Under the pieces are notes generated by a model. It was not told the origin of the DNA and ran no database searches. It saw only the letters and a program-made list of their open reading frames with translations. 64,000 nt of DNA from Prasinococcaceae sp. CCMP 1430 (Eukaryota > Plantae > Prasinodermophyta), in assembly GCA_013416795.1 (NCBI GenBank), contig RQSC01001240.1:7356-71355 (forward strand), given 5' to 3'. This document shows, in pieces, positions 3-31,121 of the stretch; position 1 is the first letter of the stretch, and every line of letters starts with the position of its first letter. Both the position numbers and the translations under genes were made by a program.

Positions 3-1400
3 ATTGCCTGCTCGTCGCAGCCGCCCACCGACGACGACACGCAGGAAAGCGCGGAGGAAGAGGCAGCGCTTCTGGCGCTGTGGATGGAGGTGCAAGACGT
101 CGATGATCTCGACGCGACCCTGGATAAGCTGGGTCCGGCCGAGCTTTGGGCCCGGTTGACCTCTGACGTCGTGCTGGATCGGAGCGAGCTCGCCGCTTTC
201 CTCGGCGTGAAGCTCGACAACGCGCTGGTGTGCGCGATCTTTCGCGTGCTCGATGAGGATGAGAGCGGCGAGCTGTCGTTCGCCGAGTGGAGAGCGCTGA
301 TGCGTCTGATCGTCGGAGCGCACACAGAGAAGGGTGCGGACGTCGCCTTCGCCCTCTTCGATCGGGACGGGAACGGGGACATAGACGCCGAGGAGTTTGC
401 GTCCGTCCTACGCGCCAACTTGCGCGAGTCAGGCATGGACGAAACGGCTGTCGAGCGCCTCGACTTGCCTGCTCATTTCGCGCGGATAGACGTTGACATG
501 TCGGGCTCGGTTTGCAAGGACGAATTCTGCGCTCTGCTCGAGAGCCTAGGCATGGACCCCAAGGCGAGCGTCACCCCAGGTCGCGGGACCGCTCTGGAGA
601 GCTACCTCAGCGCGCGCGCCGAGCGCCTCAATCGCGTGCCGATGCGACAGGCGGTGGCTGATTTCGTGGCAGAGAGCACGCGCGACTTGGTCGCACTCGC
701 TTTCCAATCGCGAAAGCTTTTGCTGCTGTTCGGTGTGTACCTCGTCCTTCTCGCCTGCATCATTTGGGAGCGCCTCGAGTACTATTATCAGATCGTGCAG
801 CTGCGCTGGGCCTCGCAGGAGGGCGTGCCCAAGAGCCGCGTGACTGCCCAGCTCGTTGGTTTGCATTTCGCGTTCGTCTTTATTACCAAGTGCTCCCGCT
901 TCCTCGCCGCGGTCGGATCAACACCCGTGGGATCGTGGCTGCCTCTGAGCCGGCTGCAGCTCGTGCACAACTTCGCCGGGCTCGGAGGGGCGGTCGTCGC
1001 CGCCGCGCACATGTACTACCATTTCCACAATTTCTACTACCTCAGCGAGATGATGACGCCAATGCTCAACTGCTGGTTCGGCCTGGGACTCAGCGCGGGC
1101 GAAGACCTCACCTTCGCTGGCATGATGCTTGCTGTACCGACGCTCACGACCGGCCACCTGAGCACGGTGTTCTTCATGCTTCTGTTAGCGTTCGCATTGC
1201 CTGCTGTGCGGGCTCATGCGTACGGCGTCTTTCTGTGGGTGCACTACCTGTCGGGGTACATTCTGGTGACCCTGCTGTTCCTGCACGGCAGCATTGAGCT
1301 CGTCCAGGAGCCGCACTTTTGGTACTTCATGATCGGGCCGCTGCTGCTCTACACGCACGAGCGACTGCGCGCTCAAGACGATGTTACTGCGCCGCCATAA
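3..1400 (+). CDS. EF-hand-containing NADPH oxidase / ferric reductase (NOX5/RBOH-like), N-terminal and transmembrane part; frame open to window start
   Basis: Three EF-hand loops (DEDESGELSFAEW, DRDGNGDIDAEEF, DVDMSGSVCKDEF), then a ferric-reductase TM domain with heme-ligating His pairs (VHNFAG...AAHMYYH; WVHY...LFLHG) and the post-TM6 motif WYFMIGPLLLYTHERL. No stop in this frame from base 3 to ATG 84. Confidence 0.9.
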   Translation: MACSSQPPTDDDTQESAEEEAALLALWMEVQDVDDLDATLDKLGPAELWARLTSDVVLDRSELAAFLGVKLDNALVCAIFRVLDEDESGELSFAEWRALMRLIVGAHTEKGADVAFALFDRDGNGDIDAEEFASVLRANLRESGMDETAVERLDLPAHFARIDVDMSGSVCKDEFCALLESLGMDPKASVTPGRGTALESYLSARAERLNRVPMRQAVADFVAESTRDLVALAFQSRKLLLLFGVYLVLLACIIWERLEYYYQIVQLRWASQEGVPKSRVTAQLVGLHFAFVFITKCSRFLAAVGSTPVGSWLPLSRLQLVHNFAGLGGAVVAAAHMYYHFHNFYYLSEMMTPMLNCWFGLGLSAGEDLTFAGMMLAVPTLTTGHLSTVFFMLLLAFALPAVRAHAYGVFLWVHYLSGYILVTLLFLHGSIELVQEPHFWYFMIGPLLLYTHERLRAQDDVTAPP

Positions 1401-16101: not shown

Positions 16102-18276
16102 CTAGCCTCCCCACCAATGCGCAGTCCCGGCGGCAATTTCGCACCCGCTGTATACGTTGGTGCCGGCATTGTACTGCACGCACTCGTTCATGCCGCGCAG
16201 CAAAGAGCGGCTGCGGTCGCGACATGCCCCTCGCACGACTGCAGCGGCTGCGCGTGCTGTGCGGCATTCGTGGGTCCCGTCTCCAAGCTCGGCCGCACGA
16301 AGCGCCGAGTCGCCTTCGTGGTCACCGACACGTCGGAGCAAGAGTTTGGGGACCGGGTAGAACGCCATTTCCGAGGGCTTGCAACAGAGCAAGTCGCACA
16401 CGCGCGCGAGTTCATCCGTGGCCACAACAGCGCTCGTCACGTCACCAGGAGGGAACGCGATGAGGGTCACCCGCGCGTACGTGCTGGCGACTACTTCGGC
16501 ACCGTCGCCTCCTTCGGCACGCGCACGCCCACTCGCTTGCTGGATGCGCGCGCTGTCGGCGCGCATCCTCTGCGCAAGGTCACGCACGCCCTCCATAGTA
16601 TCGATGAGGTCGAGCTGCTTGTGCGCGTCGCTGAGGTCGTTTTGGGAGCCAACGAGTCCAGAAGCTACGAGCGCATCGACGAACGCTTTTTCCATGTGCG
16701 CGTGATCGCCAGCGTTGAGCACGAGTTCCACCTCGCCTGCATGCACCCCGTCTGCGAGATGCCCGATGAGGTCGGTTATGAATTGCCTTTGTGCGCCGGC
16801 GCCCCCGACGGGAAGCAGCAAGCGCAGCGGTGCACACGCGTTGCAGCGCGCGAGACGCAACTCGCAGTCGGTGTATAGGTTGACGACCATGTCTCTCGGG
16901 ACCCAATGGCCGGCCAGTGAGATGCTCTCGGGCGGCACTCCCATGCGTAGCAGCTGGTGGTACGTCGCTGGCCCTTGCACCAGGTTGAGCGCGCCCGGCA
17001 CCACCACGAACCACTGTGCGTGGTTGTCGATCACGAGATTGATGACTTTGGAAAAACCTGCGGCGACGGCCGCGAGGCCAACCAGGCAGTGCGTCGCCAC
17101 TACGGGCAGATCCCGGGGCACGCCGTCCAGCAGCGGTGTGAGGTGCGCCGCTGCGATTAGTGCGGCGACGCGCAGCGCGTCAGGGTTGGCCGAACCCGCC
17201 CCATCATCGCCATCGCTGCCATAACTGCCAGCCGTCAGGGTTCCCCACATGTACTCAATCACCCCTCCCACCTCGCTCGCGACGCGCGACAAGCGCGAGT
17301 ACAGTCGCTCCCCGTCCCTCAGCACGCGCACGGCCTCGGGCTCGTCGCTGCTGCCGCGCGCTCGCCCGCGCTGGCCGGCTGCAGCTGGTTGCGCGTGCAC
17401 ATTGAAGCTGGGGCCGTCGAAAGCGGCGCTGGGGGCGAGGAAGTCAAAGATGTAGCTGCGCCTCGGACGCACCCCAGGACATTCTGCCTCGCTAGACGCA
17501 ACTCCGTTCGCATCGCTTCTGCTGTCATGGTCGCAGCACCACGATGCCAACGCCCTGGCGATGCGCAAATGGCCGTAGCCCATGCGCATTGTCCCCACGA
17601 GCACTGCCTCGCCTGGCTCGATGCCTGCGGACGCCATCGTGAGCGGACCCAGTGCTGTGAGGTGGTCTTTGGCGGCGGCGCCCGCGTCGTCGGTCTGCAG
17701 CGCGGCGAGGAGCGGCACGAGCACCGTAGAAACTTGCCACGGCGAGAGCGCCTCCGCTGCGAGGCCATTGCGACTGAGGTCGTCGCCCTCTGACGGGGCA
17801 GCCTCATCAACGCCGAGTGGCATTGCTTGACTGCATTGTTGCGGTTGTGACTGCCTGCTTCGCGCTTGCTGTTGTGGCCCACGGGGCGTGGTGATCGTTC
17901 TGAGGAGCAGAGCGCGCAGGGCGCCCAGCGCGCCGCGCGCCACGCTGCCGGTGAGGACGCGCATGACGAGCACGCACTTGCCGCGCGTGAGCGCCGATGG
18001 GCGCCGCGGGCGACCGTCCTCCTCTCCTTCTTGCCCTGGAGACCAACGCCCGCCAGGCTGGGCGCCCATGATGAAGTCGTCGATGTCAGCGGCGCGCGCA
18101 CCGAAATCCTCCAGCAGCTCGTCGTACTCGACGCTCAGTAGCAGGACCATCAGCAGCAGCGCCAGCAGCACTGCCCCAGCCACCAGGAGCGCGCCGACCG
18201 CCGCCGCTGCGACCGGCATCATCGCGACCGCCAGCGTCCTCGCGGCGCGCGCGAGGTCGCCCACGACGGCGTCCAT
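16102..18276 (-). CDS. GT-B-fold glycosyltransferase-like protein (MurG/MGDG-synthase-like) with N-terminal membrane anchor
   Basis: Hydrophobic N-terminus, MRMGYGHLRIARALAS (G.GH acceptor loop), VVATH, LLLPVGGAGAQ (GGxG nucleotide-sugar loop), DLLCCKPSEMAF (D.l.tKp motif), RRVGDHE. Confidence 0.7.
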   Translation of the reverse strand: MDAVVGDLARAARTLAVAMMPVAAAAVGALLVAGAVLLALLLMVLLLSVEYDELLEDFGARAADIDDFIMGAQPGGRWSPGQEGEEDGRPRRPSALTRGKCVLVMRVLTGSVARGALGALRALLLRTITTPRGPQQQARSRQSQPQQCSQAMPLGVDEAAPSEGDDLSRNGLAAEALSPWQVSTVLVPLLAALQTDDAGAAAKDHLTALGPLTMASAGIEPGEAVLVGTMRMGYGHLRIARALASWCCDHDSRSDANGVASSEAECPGVRPRRSYIFDFLAPSAAFDGPSFNVHAQPAAAGQRGRARGSSDEPEAVRVLRDGERLYSRLSRVASEVGGVIEYMWGTLTAGSYGSDGDDGAGSANPDALRVAALIAAAHLTPLLDGVPRDLPVVATHCLVGLAAVAAGFSKVINLVIDNHAQWFVVVPGALNLVQGPATYHQLLRMGVPPESISLAGHWVPRDMVVNLYTDCELRLARCNACAPLRLLLPVGGAGAQRQFITDLIGHLADGVHAGEVELVLNAGDHAHMEKAFVDALVASGLVGSQNDLSDAHKQLDLIDTMEGVRDLAQRMRADSARIQQASGRARAEGGDGAEVVASTYARVTLIAFPPGDVTSAVVATDELARVCDLLCCKPSEMAFYPVPKLLLRRVGDHEGDSALRAAELGDGTHECRTARAAAAVVRGACRDRSRSLLRGMNECVQYNAGTNVYSGCEIAAGTAHWWGG

Positions 18277-18558
18277 CGTCCTCTGCTTCGACGATGGAGC
18301 TCGCGCAGATGGCGCGCGTCCGGCGCGCGCCGCGTCCGGAGCGCGGCGCGCGCGCGCTCTGCCGCCTGGCGCGCCCTCGTGCGGTGCGTGCGGACACCGC
18401 ACACCCTCCGCCTGACCGCACATGCATGTGCCCCCCGTCGCCAACAGCCCACCGCCGCTGCCGCTGCCGCTGCCGATGCGCTGCACTCCGAGCTGGCGCA
18501 CTCAGCGCACTGCCTCATCGTCATGGTATCGTGTGACCATACGTCGTCTTCCCGGAGC

Positions 18559-27971: not shown

Positions 27972-30900
27972 ATGTACGGGTGGATTCACCAGTGCGCGGA
28001 GGACCTGGTGTGCGGCCGCTTCGGCCACGACGCGTGGGCGCGCACGCTGCTCGAGGCAGGCTTCTCGCACGTCGGCCATGGCGGCTGGATCCGCGAGAAG
28101 TACTACGACGACTCGGTCATCTACTCGCTGGTGGCGGGCGCCTCAAAGGCCCTCGGCATCACCCAGGTGCAGGTGCTGGGGGCCTTCGGCACGCACTTCG
28201 TGCACTTCGCGGAGAAGGCCGGGTATGGCAAGCTCATGAGGAGCATGGGGGAGACCCTGGAGGATTTCTGCGATGGGCTGGACCGCATGCACCGACATCT
28301 GGCGAAGACCATGCCCGACATCGTCTTTCCCGCATTCTGGACGTCGCGAGATGCGGTCGGGGGTGAAGAGCGCCTCCTCGTCCACTACTCGTCGCTCAGG
28401 CCTGCACTCGCGCCCATGGTCGAGACCATACTCGTCGAGGTGGGTGCCTTGTATTTCGACACGCGCGTGAGCGCATCCATCGTGAAGCCGCAGGAGCTCA
28501 ACGAAGCCACCGGGGAGTACGAGAGCACCATCGCAGTCGTCGCTGAGAAGGAGGAGACGCCATCCAAATCGGTCGACAAGAAGCTCTTTCGAGCGAGATC
28601 TGGCAACGCGAAGGATGGCGAGGGCACCGCGGCCGACGCCAACGGGCATGGCGCTGCTGGCAACGACATCCTGCGCTGCCCGTTCTCGGGCGCGACGATC
28701 CAGTCCTCGTCCCTGCACGAGGGTAGTGCTACTACCGCCGGAGCTTCCTGCCCCGTGGCGACGAAAGCACGTGGTGGCCTGGCGCCCCGCTCGCCCGAAG
28801 CATCATCCGCCGCGCAGGCTGACTCGGAGTCCTCCGTGCTGAGATGCGATGCACCGGAGGCGGAACGAGGAGATGCGCAGCTGGCCGCCGAAGAGGTACT
28901 CAAGACGCTCCCCTACCACATCATGCTATGCGACGACACCATGGGAGTGAAGAGCGCCGGTCGCGAGCTGAAGAGGATGTACGCCGGGCTGCACTGGCGA
29001 GGCCCCCCGACGCCAATGCCCGTCGCCAAGGACTTCTTTACCGTCATCCATCTCTCGCACACCGTCGCCCACCACCGCGTCCACCCTCCGCAAAACGAGC
29101 CAGAGGAGGGCACCCTCGAGCCTGACCGGACGCAACTCCTGACGGTCGCCGAGCAGCGGAGCGAGTTCGTGGACGCGGTGGGGAGGTCCGAAAGCGGCGT
29201 CGCGACGATCGAACTCGCAGCACGGACCAAGCTGCCCGGGGCGACTCACCACCTGCGGCTTAACGGCCAGCTGTCTCGGCTCAGCAATGGCGACTGGCTG
29301 TTTCACGGAGTCCCTGCCGTCCTGACGGTGGAGAGCCTGCTCAAGCAAGGCCTCTCGCTCAACTGCCTGCCAGCGTACGCTTCGGGATTGGACCTGCTCA
29401 TGGTCGGCGAGAGCATGTTTAGGGCCAACGAGGACGCCAAGGCGCAGTTTTTGGAGCGCGATCGCGCGGCCACGCGTGCCACCAACGCGAGGCTGGCGAC
29501 TGCGCTACAGTATCTGTCGCACGAAGTCAGGAACCAGCTGGCGCCGGTCGAGGCGCTCGTCAGGACACTGCCTCTGGACGACGTAGGCGGGCGGGCGGCG
29601 TCGGACCGCGATGAGATCGTCACATCCCTACGCACTACGAGTGACATCCTGAATTCCGTCCTCGCGATCGCTAAGCTGACCGCCGGGACAATTGATGCGC
29701 CGCATTCGGTGTTCTCGCTCGCTTCGCTCGTCCACGCCACCGATAGCTACGCTGTCGCCAGCGTCGAGCGCAAAGGCCAGGACGTCATGCTCGAGAGCAA
29801 GCTGGTGATGAACACTGCAGACCGAGGCTGCATCGAGGTGCCAGTTTCGTCGTCCTACGAGGAGACGACAAAGGTGCCCCATCTCGATGAGCTGTATGTC
29901 TGCAGCTGCAAGTCATGGCTGATGCAGATCATCGTCAACCTGATCAGCAATGCGACCAAATTTACTGACCAAGGCGGCATCTTTCTTTCCTGGCGGATTG
30001 ACGAGTGCGCCCCGGGTGCTAGCCGCAGCGGCAACGGCGCTAGGGATGGGGTTGGGAGCGCGGCCATTGCCGATCCGACCACCAGTGCGAGCGTGGCGAC
30101 AGAAGACTCGACAGCAGCGGAGGACACCGCCCCGCTCCGAAGCGATGCACCCGCCAGGCAAGATGGCGCCGAAGCAGGCGGGGAGGTGGTCTCGACGTCT
30201 ACTACTAAGGCTGCTGCAACCATCCCAGTCGGCGGTGGCATGCGCACTTCCACGTGCGAGTGCGGCGGCTCATCAGCGGATGGCCCGGCGAAGGATGACG
30301 ACCGCGTTTTGCTCTCGTTGACCGTGACCGACACGGGCTGCGGCATTCGACCCGAGGACCTGTCCATTGTGATGGAGGAGTTCGGTCGCGTACGCACGGG
30401 CTCCTCCAGCCAGAGTGGCACTGGCCTCGGTTTGCCGCTCGCGAAGCGCATGATCGAGACGCTCGGGGGCACCCTTGAGCTGGAGAGCGAGTACGGTGTG
30501 GGAACGTCCATAACCATCACGATCTCTCTGCCTCGCATGCAAGAGCCCGCCGCCGACGACGCCAGTCGCCTTGACGTCTTTCAGGGCATCGAGCAGGCCG
30601 CCATTGACGCCATGGACCATTCTGATGCGTTGGATGCTGACGTGCTTGGGGTCGACGACAACAGTCTGCTCCTAAAGATGTACGCGCGGAAAGCGTTGAA
30701 GAGCGGACTCAGCTTCAAATCGGCCTCCGATGGTGACGCTGCCGTCGAGCTCGCACGCCAAGGCAAGCGCTACGGAATCGTTCTTATGGACAAGCAAATG
30801 CCCGAACTCACGGGAGATCTCGCATGCTCCTCAATGCGGCAGCTCGGATACAAGGGACTGGTCGCGCTGGTCACAGCGGACAACATGTCGGGAGAAGAGA

Positions 30901-31121
30901 AGGACAAGCTCATCTGCGAGTTCGGCCTCAATATGGTGCTCATCAAGGGCGAGGCGCCCTCGTGGATGGAGTGTCTCGACGCGTGGTCCAAGGGCAAGAA
31001 GGAAGCGCTGGCTTCCAAGCGGCAAACCGCGCCGCACGACCGGTCGCTCAACCGGACCCAGCCCCGAGCCGATCGCAGATCCTTCCGAGGTTTGTGCAAG
31101 TCACACTCTGTGGCGTTCTGA
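27972..31121 (+). CDS. H-NOX + HNOBA/PAS + HisKA + HATPase + receiver hybrid histidine kinase (1049 aa, intronless)
   Basis: N-terminal MYGWIH; proximal His in LDRMHRHL (H107); YxSxR (YSSLR, 139-143); HNOBA-like LRLNGQL...LFHGVP...LLKQGLSLNCLP; H-box YLSHEVRN (H517); N-box QIIVNLISNATKF; G1 TDTGCGI; G2 GTGLGL; receiver VDDN, LMDKQMP (D940), VTA, K. Confidence 0.95.
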   Translation: MYGWIHQCAEDLVCGRFGHDAWARTLLEAGFSHVGHGGWIREKYYDDSVIYSLVAGASKALGITQVQVLGAFGTHFVHFAEKAGYGKLMRSMGETLEDFCDGLDRMHRHLAKTMPDIVFPAFWTSRDAVGGEERLLVHYSSLRPALAPMVETILVEVGALYFDTRVSASIVKPQELNEATGEYESTIAVVAEKEETPSKSVDKKLFRARSGNAKDGEGTAADANGHGAAGNDILRCPFSGATIQSSSLHEGSATTAGASCPVATKARGGLAPRSPEASSAAQADSESSVLRCDAPEAERGDAQLAAEEVLKTLPYHIMLCDDTMGVKSAGRELKRMYAGLHWRGPPTPMPVAKDFFTVIHLSHTVAHHRVHPPQNEPEEGTLEPDRTQLLTVAEQRSEFVDAVGRSESGVATIELAARTKLPGATHHLRLNGQLSRLSNGDWLFHGVPAVLTVESLLKQGLSLNCLPAYASGLDLLMVGESMFRANEDAKAQFLERDRAATRATNARLATALQYLSHEVRNQLAPVEALVRTLPLDDVGGRAASDRDEIVTSLRTTSDILNSVLAIAKLTAGTIDAPHSVFSLASLVHATDSYAVASVERKGQDVMLESKLVMNTADRGCIEVPVSSSYEETTKVPHLDELYVCSCKSWLMQIIVNLISNATKFTDQGGIFLSWRIDECAPGASRSGNGARDGVGSAAIADPTTSASVATEDSTAAEDTAPLRSDAPARQDGAEAGGEVVSTSTTKAAATIPVGGGMRTSTCECGGSSADGPAKDDDRVLLSLTVTDTGCGIRPEDLSIVMEEFGRVRTGSSSQSGTGLGLPLAKRMIETLGGTLELESEYGVGTSITITISLPRMQEPAADDASRLDVFQGIEQAAIDAMDHSDALDADVLGVDDNSLLLKMYARKALKSGLSFKSASDGDAAVELARQGKRYGIVLMDKQMPELTGDLACSSMRQLGYKGLVALVTADNMSGEEKDKLICEFGLNMVLIKGEAPSWMECLDAWSKGKKEALASKRQTAPHDRSLNRTQPRADRRSFRGLCKSHSVAF

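What the first reader, a model, noticed from the sequence alone, without database searches (positions are those of the whole stretch)
27972..31121. Eukaryotic gas sensor: sGC-type H-NOX/HNOBA module wired to a hybrid histidine kinase
Seen: a single intronless ORF with H-NOX (proximal H107, intact YxSxR), a PAS/HNOBA-like region, HisKA (H517), HATPase (N, G1, G2 boxes) and a receiver with all conserved residues (D940). The position equivalent to sGC beta1 I145 (the O2-stabilising Tyr of O2-binding H-NOX) is Met149, and position 9 is Ala. Known: animal sGC and Chlamydomonas CYG proteins link HNOB-HNOBA to a cyclase, while bacterial H-NOX mostly act in trans on separate kinases. Inference: an NO/CO-responsive, O2-excluding heme sensor feeding a His-Asp phosphorelay in one eukaryotic polypeptide. 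I know of no description of this, and it is the strongest candidate for a new system here.
Basis: partly seen in the sequence, partly recalled or inferred. Interest (0 to 1): 0.9.

Follow-up and report, generated by a model that had tools for sequence, protein, structure and literature searches.

The report
Algal gas sensor fused to kinase
A marine alga has one gene that joins the heme-based gas-sensing front half of the animal nitric-oxide receptor to a bacterial-style histidine kinase relay instead of a cGMP-making enzyme. The design recurs in other protists, and I found no description of it, so it is a testable candidate for how phytoplankton sense NO or CO.

Summary
Observation confirmed. 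Window 27972-31121 (+) is one uninterrupted 1049-codon ORF.

The gene is eukaryotic and native. It lies between an ABC1 kinase gene and an ankyrin-RING gene, an independent assembly shows the same order, and GC3 matches the neighbours. Strain differences fall almost entirely outside the folded domains.

The H-NOX is the sGC beta1 / Nostoc type: non-polar distal pocket, no distal Tyr. The AlphaFold model's best PDB matches are human sGC beta1 chains. One continuous helix (471-532) runs from the PAS domain through the phospho-accepting H517.

The design is not unique. A search of 1.84 billion representative proteins gave 16 H-NOX-kinase fusions, from chrysophyte, MMETSP and marine metagenome or metatranscriptome sources. 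None was in the bacterial-type clade, and I found no paper describing the fusion.

All 16 also share an unreported Cys-Pro-Phe motif, resembling a heme-regulatory motif, in the disordered linker.

Best reading: a homodimeric NO/CO-sensing hybrid histidine kinase. Ligand, sign of regulation and Hpt partner are inferred. It is a new variant of known kinds.

The scan noted this same stretch once before in an overlapping window (s1-396475), not on other DNA.

The parts
27972..31121 (+). Complete intronless CDS (1049 aa plus stop) of the H-NOX/HNOBA hybrid histidine kinase
   Evidence: ORF list and translation. Five Pfam families lie on one ORF. A second assembly carries a 99% identical gene.
27972..28544 (+). 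H-NOX (HNOB) heme domain, residues 1-191. It holds the proximal H107, Y139-S141-R143 for the heme propionates, P120, and a non-polar distal pocket (I5, A9, F76, M149).
   Evidence: Pfam HNOB 7.8e-30. PDB sequence matches: Nostoc Alr2278 H-NOX 2e-23 and sGC beta1 2e-22. AF2 pLDDT about 95. Foldseek TM 0.87-0.90 to Nostoc H-NOX. Residue table.
28545..28880 (+). Disordered low-complexity linker, residues 192-303
   Evidence: AF2 pLDDT below 50 over 197-200, 209-238 and 244-303. Four of the 13 strain amino-acid differences fall here.
28674..28685 (+). Arg-Cys-Pro-Phe motif (residues 235-238) inside the linker; a candidate heme-regulatory (CP) motif
   Evidence: C236-P237-F238 are invariant in 15 H-NOX kinases that average 25% identity. 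The motif is present in 16/16 kinase-fused, 12/28 cyclase-fused and 16/39 other long H-NOX proteins. The IRP2 peptide TPILCPFHL binds heme (PMC10377097).
28881..29345 (+). HNOBA PAS-like core, residues 304-458
   Evidence: Pfam HNOBA 1.3e-9. AF2 gives a PAS-type alpha/beta fold with pLDDT about 90, apart from the loop 364-387. The top Foldseek hits, sGC beta1 chains, align across H-NOX, PAS and the helix.
29382..29681 (+). Signalling helix continuous with DHp alpha1 (residues 471-532, with the phospho-acceptor H517 at nt 29520-29522), followed by DHp alpha2 (540-570)
   Evidence: AF2 models one unbroken helix 471-532 and then a hairpin helix 540-570. The H-box aligns with GacS MSHEIRTPLNG. The spacing from the PAS exit to the His is exactly 50 residues in all four members of the window's family.
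29706..30539 (+). Catalytic ATP-binding domain (residues 579-856) with N, G1, F and G2 boxes. A disordered insert at residues 685-773 (nt 30024-30290) interrupts it.
   Evidence: Pfam HATPase_c 3.4e-19. PDB alignments to GacS and YycG cover the N box and G1-G2. AF2 fold and insert. N656, N660, D787, G789, G791, G816, G818 and G820 are invariant in 15 relatives.
30636..31028 (+). Receiver domain (residues 889-1019), with phospho-acceptor D940 (nt 30789-30791), D895/D896, T968 and K992
   Evidence: Pfam Response_reg 1.6e-10. PDB matches include the ShkA, RcsC and SLN1 receivers. AF2 gives an (alpha/beta)5 fold. Residue table.

Best explanation
This is a cytosolic, homodimeric, heme-based sensor of a diatomic gas (NO, possibly CO) in a eukaryotic alga. 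The output of a soluble guanylate cyclase has been replaced by a hybrid histidine kinase. Shown by sequence and model: an sGC-beta1/Nostoc-type H-NOX with every heme-binding residue and a non-polar distal pocket; an sGC-type PAS (HNOBA) domain; one continuous helix from the PAS exit into the DHp helix that carries H517; an intact ATP-binding domain; and an intact receiver with D940. Inferred: ferrous heme on H107 binds NO or CO. As in sGC, the H-NOX/PAS rearrangement is then passed down the coiled coil. Here that changes the register or bend of the DHp bundle, and so the balance between autophosphorylation of H517 and phosphatase activity. The phosphoryl group moves from H517 to D940, then to a separate Hpt protein and a response regulator. 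The sign of regulation is unknown; in bacterial H-NOX/kinase pairs, NO-bound H-NOX inhibits the kinase. The Hpt partner is also unknown. A conserved Cys-Pro-Phe motif in the disordered linker may add a second, heme- or redox-dependent input.
For: Five domains lie on one ORF. H107, Y139, S141, R143 and P120 are present in the window protein; H107, Y139 and R143 are invariant and S141 and P120 nearly so across 15 relatives. Position 149 is always hydrophobic (M/I/L/V/C), never Tyr, and position 76 is always Phe. The closest solved sequences are the NO/CO-binding Nostoc H-NOX and sGC beta1. The AF2 model's best PDB matches are human sGC beta1 chains (E about 1e-18), then Nostoc H-NOX (TM 0.87-0.90), then the hybrid kinases ShkA and GacS. 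Helix 471-532 is continuous through H517. The PAS-to-His spacing is fixed within each family: 50 residues in 4/4 of the window's family and 55 in 8/11 of the other. All kinase and receiver catalytic residues are conserved. Two strains differ at 24 synonymous and 13 non-synonymous codons; 12 of the 13 lie outside the folded domains and the other is a conservative L980I. The setting is eukaryotic in four independent contigs. Relatives come from transcriptomes (MMETSP, EukProt, MERC), so the fusion is expressed in other species. A distal Tyr is required for O2 binding in H-NOX proteins (review PMC8738867).
Against: No biochemistry was done: heme binding, ligand preference and kinase regulation are all untested. 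The HisKA Pfam score is below threshold (18.7 against 26.9 bits), and the kinase core sits on a very long branch (2.29 substitutions per site), so its activity could be altered. The sGC helix-start motif DLPxHxxxRD is degenerate in the window's family (CLPAYASGLD). No transcript evidence was obtained for this particular gene. No Hpt partner was found, because only this window could be read. AlphaFold modelled a monomer without heme.
Confidence: 0.72

Rival explanations
1. It is an oxygen sensor, like the Tyr-containing H-NOX of obligate anaerobes or the atypical sGCs of flies and worms, reporting O2 tension to the phosphorelay.
For: The H-NOX fold can bind O2 in some family members (review PMC8738867). 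An oxygenic alga sees large O2 swings.
Against: There is no distal-pocket Tyr. Position 149 is Met here and hydrophobic in all 15 relatives, position 76 is Phe and position 9 is Ala. The nearest solved relatives are the O2-excluding Nostoc H-NOX and sGC beta1.
Confidence: 0.07
2. It mainly senses heme availability or redox state, not a gas. The conserved Cys-Pro-Phe motif, or a heme-free H-NOX, would respond to labile heme or oxidants and set kinase activity.
For: The CPF motif is invariant in all H-NOX kinases examined and sits in a disordered linker, as heme-regulatory motifs do. Some relatives carry 2-3 tandem copies. The IRP2 CPFH peptide binds heme (PMC10377097). Vibrio cholerae H-NOX can act heme-free as a redox sensor (abstract of PMC7108781).
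Against: The canonical heme pocket is fully conserved, which argues that heme is a stably bound cofactor. The CPF motif also occurs in cyclase-fused relatives, so it belongs to the sensor module and is not a separate sensor. Its function is untested. This could be an added input and need not replace gas sensing.
Confidence: 0.13
3. It is an evolutionary relic or pseudo-kinase: the domains are recognisable, but the kinase no longer signals.
For: HisKA scores below the Pfam threshold. The kinase core is on a long branch. There are large low-complexity inserts. No transcript evidence was obtained for this gene.
Against: All catalytic residues of the H, N, G1, F and G2 boxes and of the receiver are intact and conserved among four lineages that share only 40-60% identity. 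Strain differences avoid the folded domains. The ORF is open over 3.1 kb.
Confidence: 0.05
4. It is bacterial contamination, or an assembly or gene-model artefact that joins two genes.
For: Two-component kinases are typically bacterial, and the gene has no introns.
Against: The flanking genes are an ankyrin-RING gene and an ABC1 kinase gene, and other readers noted retrotransposons in the window. An independent Logan assembly has the same gene order. GC3 is 0.79, within the neighbours' range of 0.67-0.84. Homologues lie beside SET/zf-MYND, dynamin and gamma-tubulin-complex genes. A scan of 185,579 bacterial and archaeal genomes found no relative beyond generic ATPase-domain matches. All five domains share one uninterrupted reading frame in the window and in the other three family lineages (P0002, P0003, P0110).
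Confidence: 0.02

Closest known systems
Soluble guanylate cyclase beta1 (animals) and the Chlamydomonas/volvocine CYG-type H-NOX cyclases
   Same: The sensor half is the same: H-NOX with a proximal His and YxSxR, an HNOBA/PAS domain, and a coiled-coil signalling helix. Human sGC beta1 chains are the best structural matches to the model, and the sequence match is E 2e-22.
   Different: There is no cyclase domain. The helix runs straight into a DHp/H-box, then an ATP-binding domain and a receiver. The protein is probably a homodimer, unlike the alpha/beta heterodimer of sGC. It has long disordered inserts and a CPF motif that the animal and green-algal sequences examined lack.
Bacterial H-NOX / H-NOX-associated histidine kinase pairs (HnoX-HnoK of Shewanella, HqsK of Vibrio, Silicibacter)
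   Same: The logic is the same: a heme-NO sensor controls histidine kinase autophosphorylation and a His-Asp relay (abstracts of PMC4436077 and PMC6759604).
   Different: In bacteria the H-NOX is a stand-alone protein of about 180 residues that acts in trans from a neighbouring gene. Here the sensor is in cis and uses the eukaryote-type H-NOX-PAS-helix module. On the tree, its H-NOX lies in the long, multidomain clade, separated from the clade of 49 short, stand-alone (bacterial-type) sequences with 99% support.
Nostoc sp. PCC 7120 Alr2278 H-NOX
   Same: It is the closest solved H-NOX by sequence (E 2e-23) and fold (TM 0.87-0.90). H105/H107, Y134-S136-R138/Y139-S141-R143 and M144/M149 correspond.
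   Different: The Nostoc protein is a single-domain bacterial protein.
Heme-based sensor kinases with the sensor in cis (FixL heme-PAS, DosS/DosT heme-GAF)
   Same: One polypeptide couples a heme gas sensor through a helix to a histidine kinase. This rests on established knowledge and was not tested here.
   Different: The heme domain is unrelated (PAS or GAF, not H-NOX), those proteins are bacterial, and FixL is an O2 sensor.
H-NOX-HNOBA-protein kinase of Chlamydomonas sp. UWO 241 (KAG1669245.1, P0188)
   Same: The same sensor module is fused to a non-cyclase output in an alga.
   Different: The output is a Ser/Thr/Tyr-type protein kinase, not a histidine kinase, and there is no CPF motif.

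Membership tests
H-NOX / HNOB (PF07700) | Profile match above the curated threshold | tested here: met
   104.4 bits against a cut-off of 25.5, covering residues 2-168 and model positions 1-161 of 163.
H-NOX / HNOB (PF07700) | Proximal histidine and the Y-x-S-x-R heme-propionate motif | tested here: met
   H107 and Y139/S141/R143 align with Nostoc H105 and Y134/S136/R138. H107, Y139 and R143 are invariant and S141 nearly so in 15 relatives.
H-NOX / HNOB (PF07700) | H-NOX fold | tested here: met
   AF2 pLDDT about 95 for residues 1-191. Foldseek TM 0.87-0.90 to Nostoc H-NOX structures.
H-NOX / HNOB (PF07700) | Binds heme and a diatomic gas | not testable with these tools
   This needs expression and UV-vis spectroscopy.
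NO-selective (O2-excluding) H-NOX subclass | No distal-pocket Tyr or H-bond network | tested here: met
   M149, F76 and A9; no Tyr at position 149 in any of the 15 relatives. The Tyr requirement for O2 binding is stated in PMC8738867.
HNOBA (PF07701) | Profile match above threshold, lying between the H-NOX and the output domain | tested here: met
   38.4 bits against a cut-off of 23.4, residues 303-487. AF2 gives a PAS-like fold followed by a helix.
Soluble guanylate cyclase | C-terminal class III cyclase catalytic domain (PF00211) | tested here: not met
   Pfam finds no Guanylate_cyc match; HisKA, HATPase_c and Response_reg take its place. Cyclase-bearing relatives such as P0120 and P0117 do score for that family.
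HisKA-type histidine kinase | HisKA/DHp profile match above threshold | tested here: inconclusive
   18.7 bits against a cut-off of 26.9. However, the H-box LSHEVRNQLAP aligns to GacS, and AF2 gives a two-helix DHp hairpin.
HisKA-type histidine kinase | HATPase_c domain with N, G1, F and G2 boxes | tested here: met
   69.8 bits against a cut-off of 26.4. The boxes align to GacS and YycG and are invariant in 15 relatives.
Hybrid histidine kinase | C-terminal receiver with the acidic pair, phospho-Asp, Thr and Lys | tested here: met
   Response_reg 41.6 bits against a cut-off of 30.2. D895/D896, D940, T968 and K992 are present.
Hybrid histidine kinase | Downstream Hpt protein and response regulator | not tested
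   Only this window could be read. No Hpt domain lies on this polypeptide.
Bacterial H-NOX/HnoK two-component system | Stand-alone H-NOX encoded next to, and acting in trans on, a separate kinase | tested here: not met
   Sensor and kinase are one ORF. The H-NOX lies outside the clade of short, bacterial-type sequences. No bacterial homologue was found among 185,579 genomes.
Heme-regulatory (CP) motif | Cys-Pro followed by a hydrophobic residue, in a flexible region | tested here: met
   RCPF at residues 235-238 lies in a segment with pLDDT below 50. It is invariant in 15 relatives. Compare IRP2 CPFH.
Heme-regulatory (CP) motif | Transient heme binding through the Cys thiolate | not testable with these tools
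   This needs peptide or protein hemin titration.

The most novel reading that the evidence does not exclude
H-NOX-HNOBA hybrid histidine kinases are the main NO (or CO) receptors of several algal lineages with red-alga-derived plastids: chrysophytes and the still unidentified lineage of this window. Their invariant Cys-Pro-Phe motif in the disordered linker is a working heme-regulatory site. It could be a second, labile-heme or redox input, or a switchable sixth ligand or heme-loading arm for the H-NOX pocket. The protein would then combine gas and heme/redox status before committing to a phosphorelay. This would be a natural sGC sensor read out by phosphorylation, with a regulatory element that animal sGC lacks.
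Probability: 0.25. Interest if true: 0.8.

Novelty: new variant of a known kind. Interest (0 to 1): 0.62.

Why it matters
NO is an established signal in phytoplankton stress, bloom decline and alga-bacterium or alga-virus interactions (my own knowledge). Yet a 2022 study states that chlorophytes were the only protists previously known to have metazoan-type sGCs (bioRxiv 10.1101/2022.02.14.480389), and a survey of eukaryotic histidine kinases mentions no heme or H-NOX input (PMC6324907).

This gene and its relatives give a concrete, expressible receptor candidate. They also show that the sGC sensor module is a portable cassette: through one signalling helix it can drive a cyclase, a histidine kinase or a Ser/Thr kinase.

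A probably homodimeric H-NOX-PAS-helix-kinase with a simple phosphorylation read-out could serve as a tractable model for how ligand binding at the H-NOX heme is passed along the coiled coil, a question still studied in sGC. The conserved CPF motif is a new handle on heme loading or redox control of H-NOX proteins.

Tried and rejected
1. Bacterial origin or contamination is rejected. The flanks are eukaryotic, an independent assembly shows the same gene order, GC3 is native, and a scan of bacterial and archaeal genomes gave no hit beyond generic HATPase matches.

2. The word-indexed protein search found only three relatives, even with region 1-190 and with a 15-sequence profile. Taken alone, that would have wrongly suggested near-uniqueness. 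The exhaustive representative search showed a wider family.

3. The metagenome contig scan added nothing useful.

4. One origin of the fusion is not settled. The kinase cores favour a single clade: the constrained tree is 28.7 lnL better, p-AU 0.865. The H-NOX domains do not reject one clade but fit it worse: 61.6 lnL lower, p-AU 0.088. Both one fusion followed by output swapping and two independent fusions remain possible.

5. The species could not be identified. Exact-sequence look-ups of two other window ORFs found nothing, and earlier notes say only 'GC-rich marine alga'. No member of the 90% identity cluster carries an NCBI, UniProt or MMETSP accession, so I do not name a species.

6. The literature searches (10 of 10 used) found no description of an H-NOX-histidine-kinase fusion in eukaryotes. 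Two of them were badly framed and uninformative. The library lacks most subscription-journal papers, and InterPro architecture tables could not be consulted.
Full report
**What is there**

Window 27972-31121 (+) is a single open reading frame of 1049 codons, from ATG to TGA. Pfam finds five families in order:
- HNOB, residues 2-168, E 7.8e-30
- HNOBA, 303-487, E 1.3e-9
- HisKA, 510-572, E 0.0018 (18.7 bits, below the 26.9-bit cut-off)
- HATPase_c, 781-854, E 3.4e-19
- Response_reg, 891-993, E 1.6e-10

The kinase boxes align with solved kinases such as GacS and YycG: H-box LSHEVRNQLAP, N box NLISNATKFT, G1 DTGCGI and G2 GTGLGL. The receiver has D895/D896, D940, T968 and K992.

**It is a native eukaryotic gene**

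- Downstream on the minus strand lies an ankyrin-repeat/RING-finger gene; upstream lies an ABC1 atypical kinase gene. An ABC transporter gene is elsewhere in the window, and other readers noted non-LTR retrotransposons there.
- An independent Logan assembly (SRR22824304, L001) carries a 99% identical protein with the same ankyrin-RING neighbour. It aligns to the window at 97.4% over 5.9 kb.
- GC3 of the gene is 0.79, inside the range of its neighbours (0.67-0.84).
- More distant family members lie next to SET/zf-MYND and dynamin genes (P0002), or next to gamma-tubulin-complex genes (P0003).
- A pattern scan of one genome from each of 185,579 bacterial and archaeal species found only generic ATPase-domain matches.
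- The two strains differ at 24 synonymous and 13 non-synonymous codons. Twelve of the non-synonymous differences lie outside the folded domains, in the linker, the insert in the ATP-binding domain, the stretch before the receiver or the tail. The remaining one is a conservative L980I. This is the pattern expected under purifying selection on the domains.

I could not identify the species. Earlier notes of this scan call the genome a GC-rich marine alga. The 90% identity cluster has 13 members, all from ENA or Logan assemblies (the ENA ones probably marine metagenomes), and none has an NCBI, UniProt or MMETSP accession.

**Type of sensor**

By sequence, the H-NOX is closest among solved structures to the Nostoc Alr2278 H-NOX (E 2e-23) and to sGC beta1 (E 2e-22). 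H107 matches Nostoc H105, Y139/S141/R143 match Y134/S136/R138, and M149 matches M144.

Across 15 H-NOX kinases that average 25% identity:
- the proximal His, the Tyr and the Arg are invariant, and the Ser nearly so;
- position 76 is always Phe;
- position 149 is always hydrophobic and never Tyr.

A distal Tyr is required for O2 binding in H-NOX proteins (PMC8738867). The pocket is therefore of the NO/CO-binding, O2-excluding kind. That is an inference from residues, not a measurement.

**Predicted structure**

An AlphaFold2 model was built from a 47-row alignment (mean pLDDT 76.6). It contains:
- a confident H-NOX (residues 1-191, pLDDT about 95);
- a disordered linker (197-303);
- a PAS-like domain (306-458);
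- one unbroken helix (471-532) that contains H517;
- the second DHp helix (540-570);
- an ATP-binding domain (579-856) interrupted by a disordered insert (685-773);
- a receiver (889-1019).

Foldseek against the PDB ranks human sGC beta1 chains first (8hbf_B, 6jt0_B and others, E about 1e-18). Nostoc H-NOX structures follow (TM 0.87-0.90), then the hybrid kinase ShkA and GacS.

The distance from the conserved Pro at the PAS exit to the phospho-accepting His is exactly 50 residues in all four members of the window's family. It is 55 in eight of eleven members of the sister family. A fixed spacing is what a rigid helical transmission element would require.

**Mechanism proposed**

- Shown: the sGC sensor cassette (H-NOX, PAS, signalling helix) is joined, helix to helix, to a DHp domain.
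- Inferred: gas binding at the heme reorients H-NOX and PAS and alters the coiled coil, as in sGC. Here that shifts the kinase/phosphatase balance at H517. The phosphoryl group then passes to D940, and on to an Hpt protein and a response regulator encoded elsewhere.
- Unknown: the sign of regulation, the physiological ligand (NO or CO) and the partners.

**How widespread it is**

The word-indexed search found only three relatives. The exhaustive search of 1.84 billion representative proteins with the H-NOX domain returned 1065 hits, of which the best 150 are listed.

I classified 151 proteins with local profile searches and Pfam: the 150 listed, plus P0002 from the first search.

| Class | Count |
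|---|---|
| Histidine kinase core present | 16 |
| Cyclase domain present | 28 |
| Ser/Thr/Tyr protein kinase (P0188, Chlamydomonas sp. UWO 241, KAG1669245.1) | 1 |
| Shorter than 260 residues, stand-alone | 67 |
| Fragments, or outputs not recognised | 39 |

- Besides the window protein, nine of the 16 kinase-bearing proteins show all five Pfam families.
- Sources of the kinase fusions include EukProt (for example the chrysophyte Epipyxis sp. PR26KG), an MMETSP transcript, a MERC entry that I take to be from a marine metatranscriptome, JGI and Logan. None carries an NCBI or UniProt accession within its 90% identity cluster.
- Where longer contigs exist, the neighbouring genes have a eukaryotic look (protein kinase, sugar transporter).

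**Phylogeny**

On the H-NOX tree, 49 of the short, stand-alone (presumably bacterial) sequences form one clade. The other 80 rows, mostly long multidomain proteins, form the other side, with 99% SH-aLRT support. The long clade holds animal sGC beta1 (krill, mite, tick), a volvocine cyclase, a diatom cyclase and all the kinase fusions. The window protein forms a 99%-supported trio with P0003 and P0110.

On a tree of kinase-plus-receiver cores, the H-NOX-linked kinases form two clades, both outside a 95%-supported clade of 80 generic hybrid kinases. Forcing them into one clade gives a better likelihood than the free search found (+28.7 lnL, p-AU 0.865).

For the H-NOX domains, a single clade is not rejected but fits worse (-61.6 lnL, p-AU 0.088). 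Either one old fusion followed by output swapping, or two fusions, remains possible.

The window's family has a very long stem branch in the kinase core (2.29 substitutions per site). This probably explains the sub-threshold HisKA score.

**An unreported motif**

All 15 aligned H-NOX kinases share an invariant Cys-Pro-Phe, usually preceded by Arg or Lys and followed by Ser or His. It lies about 35-70 residues after the H-NOX domain, in an otherwise unalignable, disordered linker. In the window protein it is RCPF at residues 235-238.

Counts of proteins with the motif in that region:

| Output class | With CPF |
|---|---|
| Kinase-fused | 16 of 16 |
| Cyclase-fused (includes the diatom Chaetoceros debilis protein) | 12 of 28 |
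| Other long H-NOX proteins | 16 of 39 |
| Animal sGC beta1 and green-algal proteins examined | none |

- Some proteins carry two or three tandem copies.
- Its form and setting match heme-regulatory CP motifs. The IRP2 peptide TPILCPFHL binds heme with sub-micromolar to micromolar affinity (PMC10377097).
- Whether the motif binds heme, acts as a redox or nitrosation site, or helps load the H-NOX pocket is untested.

**Comparison with what is known**

- The protein works like an sGC in its sensor half. It is not an sGC, because the defining cyclase domain is absent.
- It works like a bacterial H-NOX/kinase pair in logic. It is not a member of that system, because sensor and kinase are one polypeptide and the H-NOX is of the eukaryote type.
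- It is a hybrid histidine kinase by its ATP-binding domain, H-box and receiver. The HisKA profile score is sub-threshold.

**Literature**

- Full-text searches for H-NOX or HNOB combined with histidine kinase and algal or protist terms found no description of the fusion.
- A survey of eukaryotic histidine kinases lists three in one haptophyte and does not mention heme or HNOB at all (PMC6324907).
- The search library is incomplete and InterPro could not be consulted, so an existing database-level listing cannot be excluded.

**Verdict**

This is a new variant built from known modules and belongs to a wider, undescribed protist family. It is not a categorically new system. The same stretch was noted once more by this scan in an overlapping window (s1-396475); the scan did not find it on other DNA.

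Noticed in passing
window 28674-28685 (protein residues 235-238); also P0114, P0122, P0124, P0234, P0157 and others: An invariant [R/K]-Cys-Pro-Phe-[S/H] motif sits in the disordered H-NOX-to-PAS linker. It is present in 16/16 kinase-fused and about 40% of cyclase-fused or other long protist H-NOX proteins, and absent from the animal and green-algal proteins examined. Some proteins have 2-3 tandem copies. It resembles heme-regulatory CP motifs such as IRP2 CPFH.
   Followed up: partly
P0188 (KAG1669245.1, Chlamydomonas sp. UWO 241), 978 aa: HNOB and HNOBA are fused to a Ser/Thr/Tyr protein kinase domain in place of a cyclase. This is a third output type for the sGC sensor cassette.
   Followed up: no
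P0117 (Chaetoceros debilis, MMETSP0149/EukProt), P0121, P0133, P0135, P0170: sGC-like HNOB-HNOBA-Guanylate_cyc proteins occur in a diatom transcriptome and in environmental or unnamed data (P0121, P0133). A 2022 paper says chlorophytes were the only protists known to have such an architecture.
   Followed up: partly
P0134, P0137, P0004 (Symbiodinium 'gcy-35'), P0212, P0213, P0235, P0242, P0246: These are long (600-820 aa) proteins, apparently eukaryotic (P0004 is from Symbiodinium), with an N-terminal H-NOX and C-terminal regions that match no Pfam family, or only weak sub-threshold TIR_2 or HET. They may be further, unknown outputs.
   Followed up: no
L009 2692-6945 and L010 2688-6941: In relative P0265 the receiver domain is called as a separate 439-aa ORF starting 19 nt after the kinase ORF ends. 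This suggests an intron, a frameshift or a real split of kinase and receiver in that species.
   Followed up: no
window 167-256 (+): ARAGORN calls a 90-nt tRNA-Glu (TTC) inside a 438-codon ORF (84-1400) near the window start. The length is unusual for a tRNA, so this may be an intron-containing gene or a false call.
   Followed up: no
window 16105-18501 (-): A 799-aa ORF gives strong matches to DUF6937 and DUF6938, two domains of unknown function that occur together.
   Followed up: no
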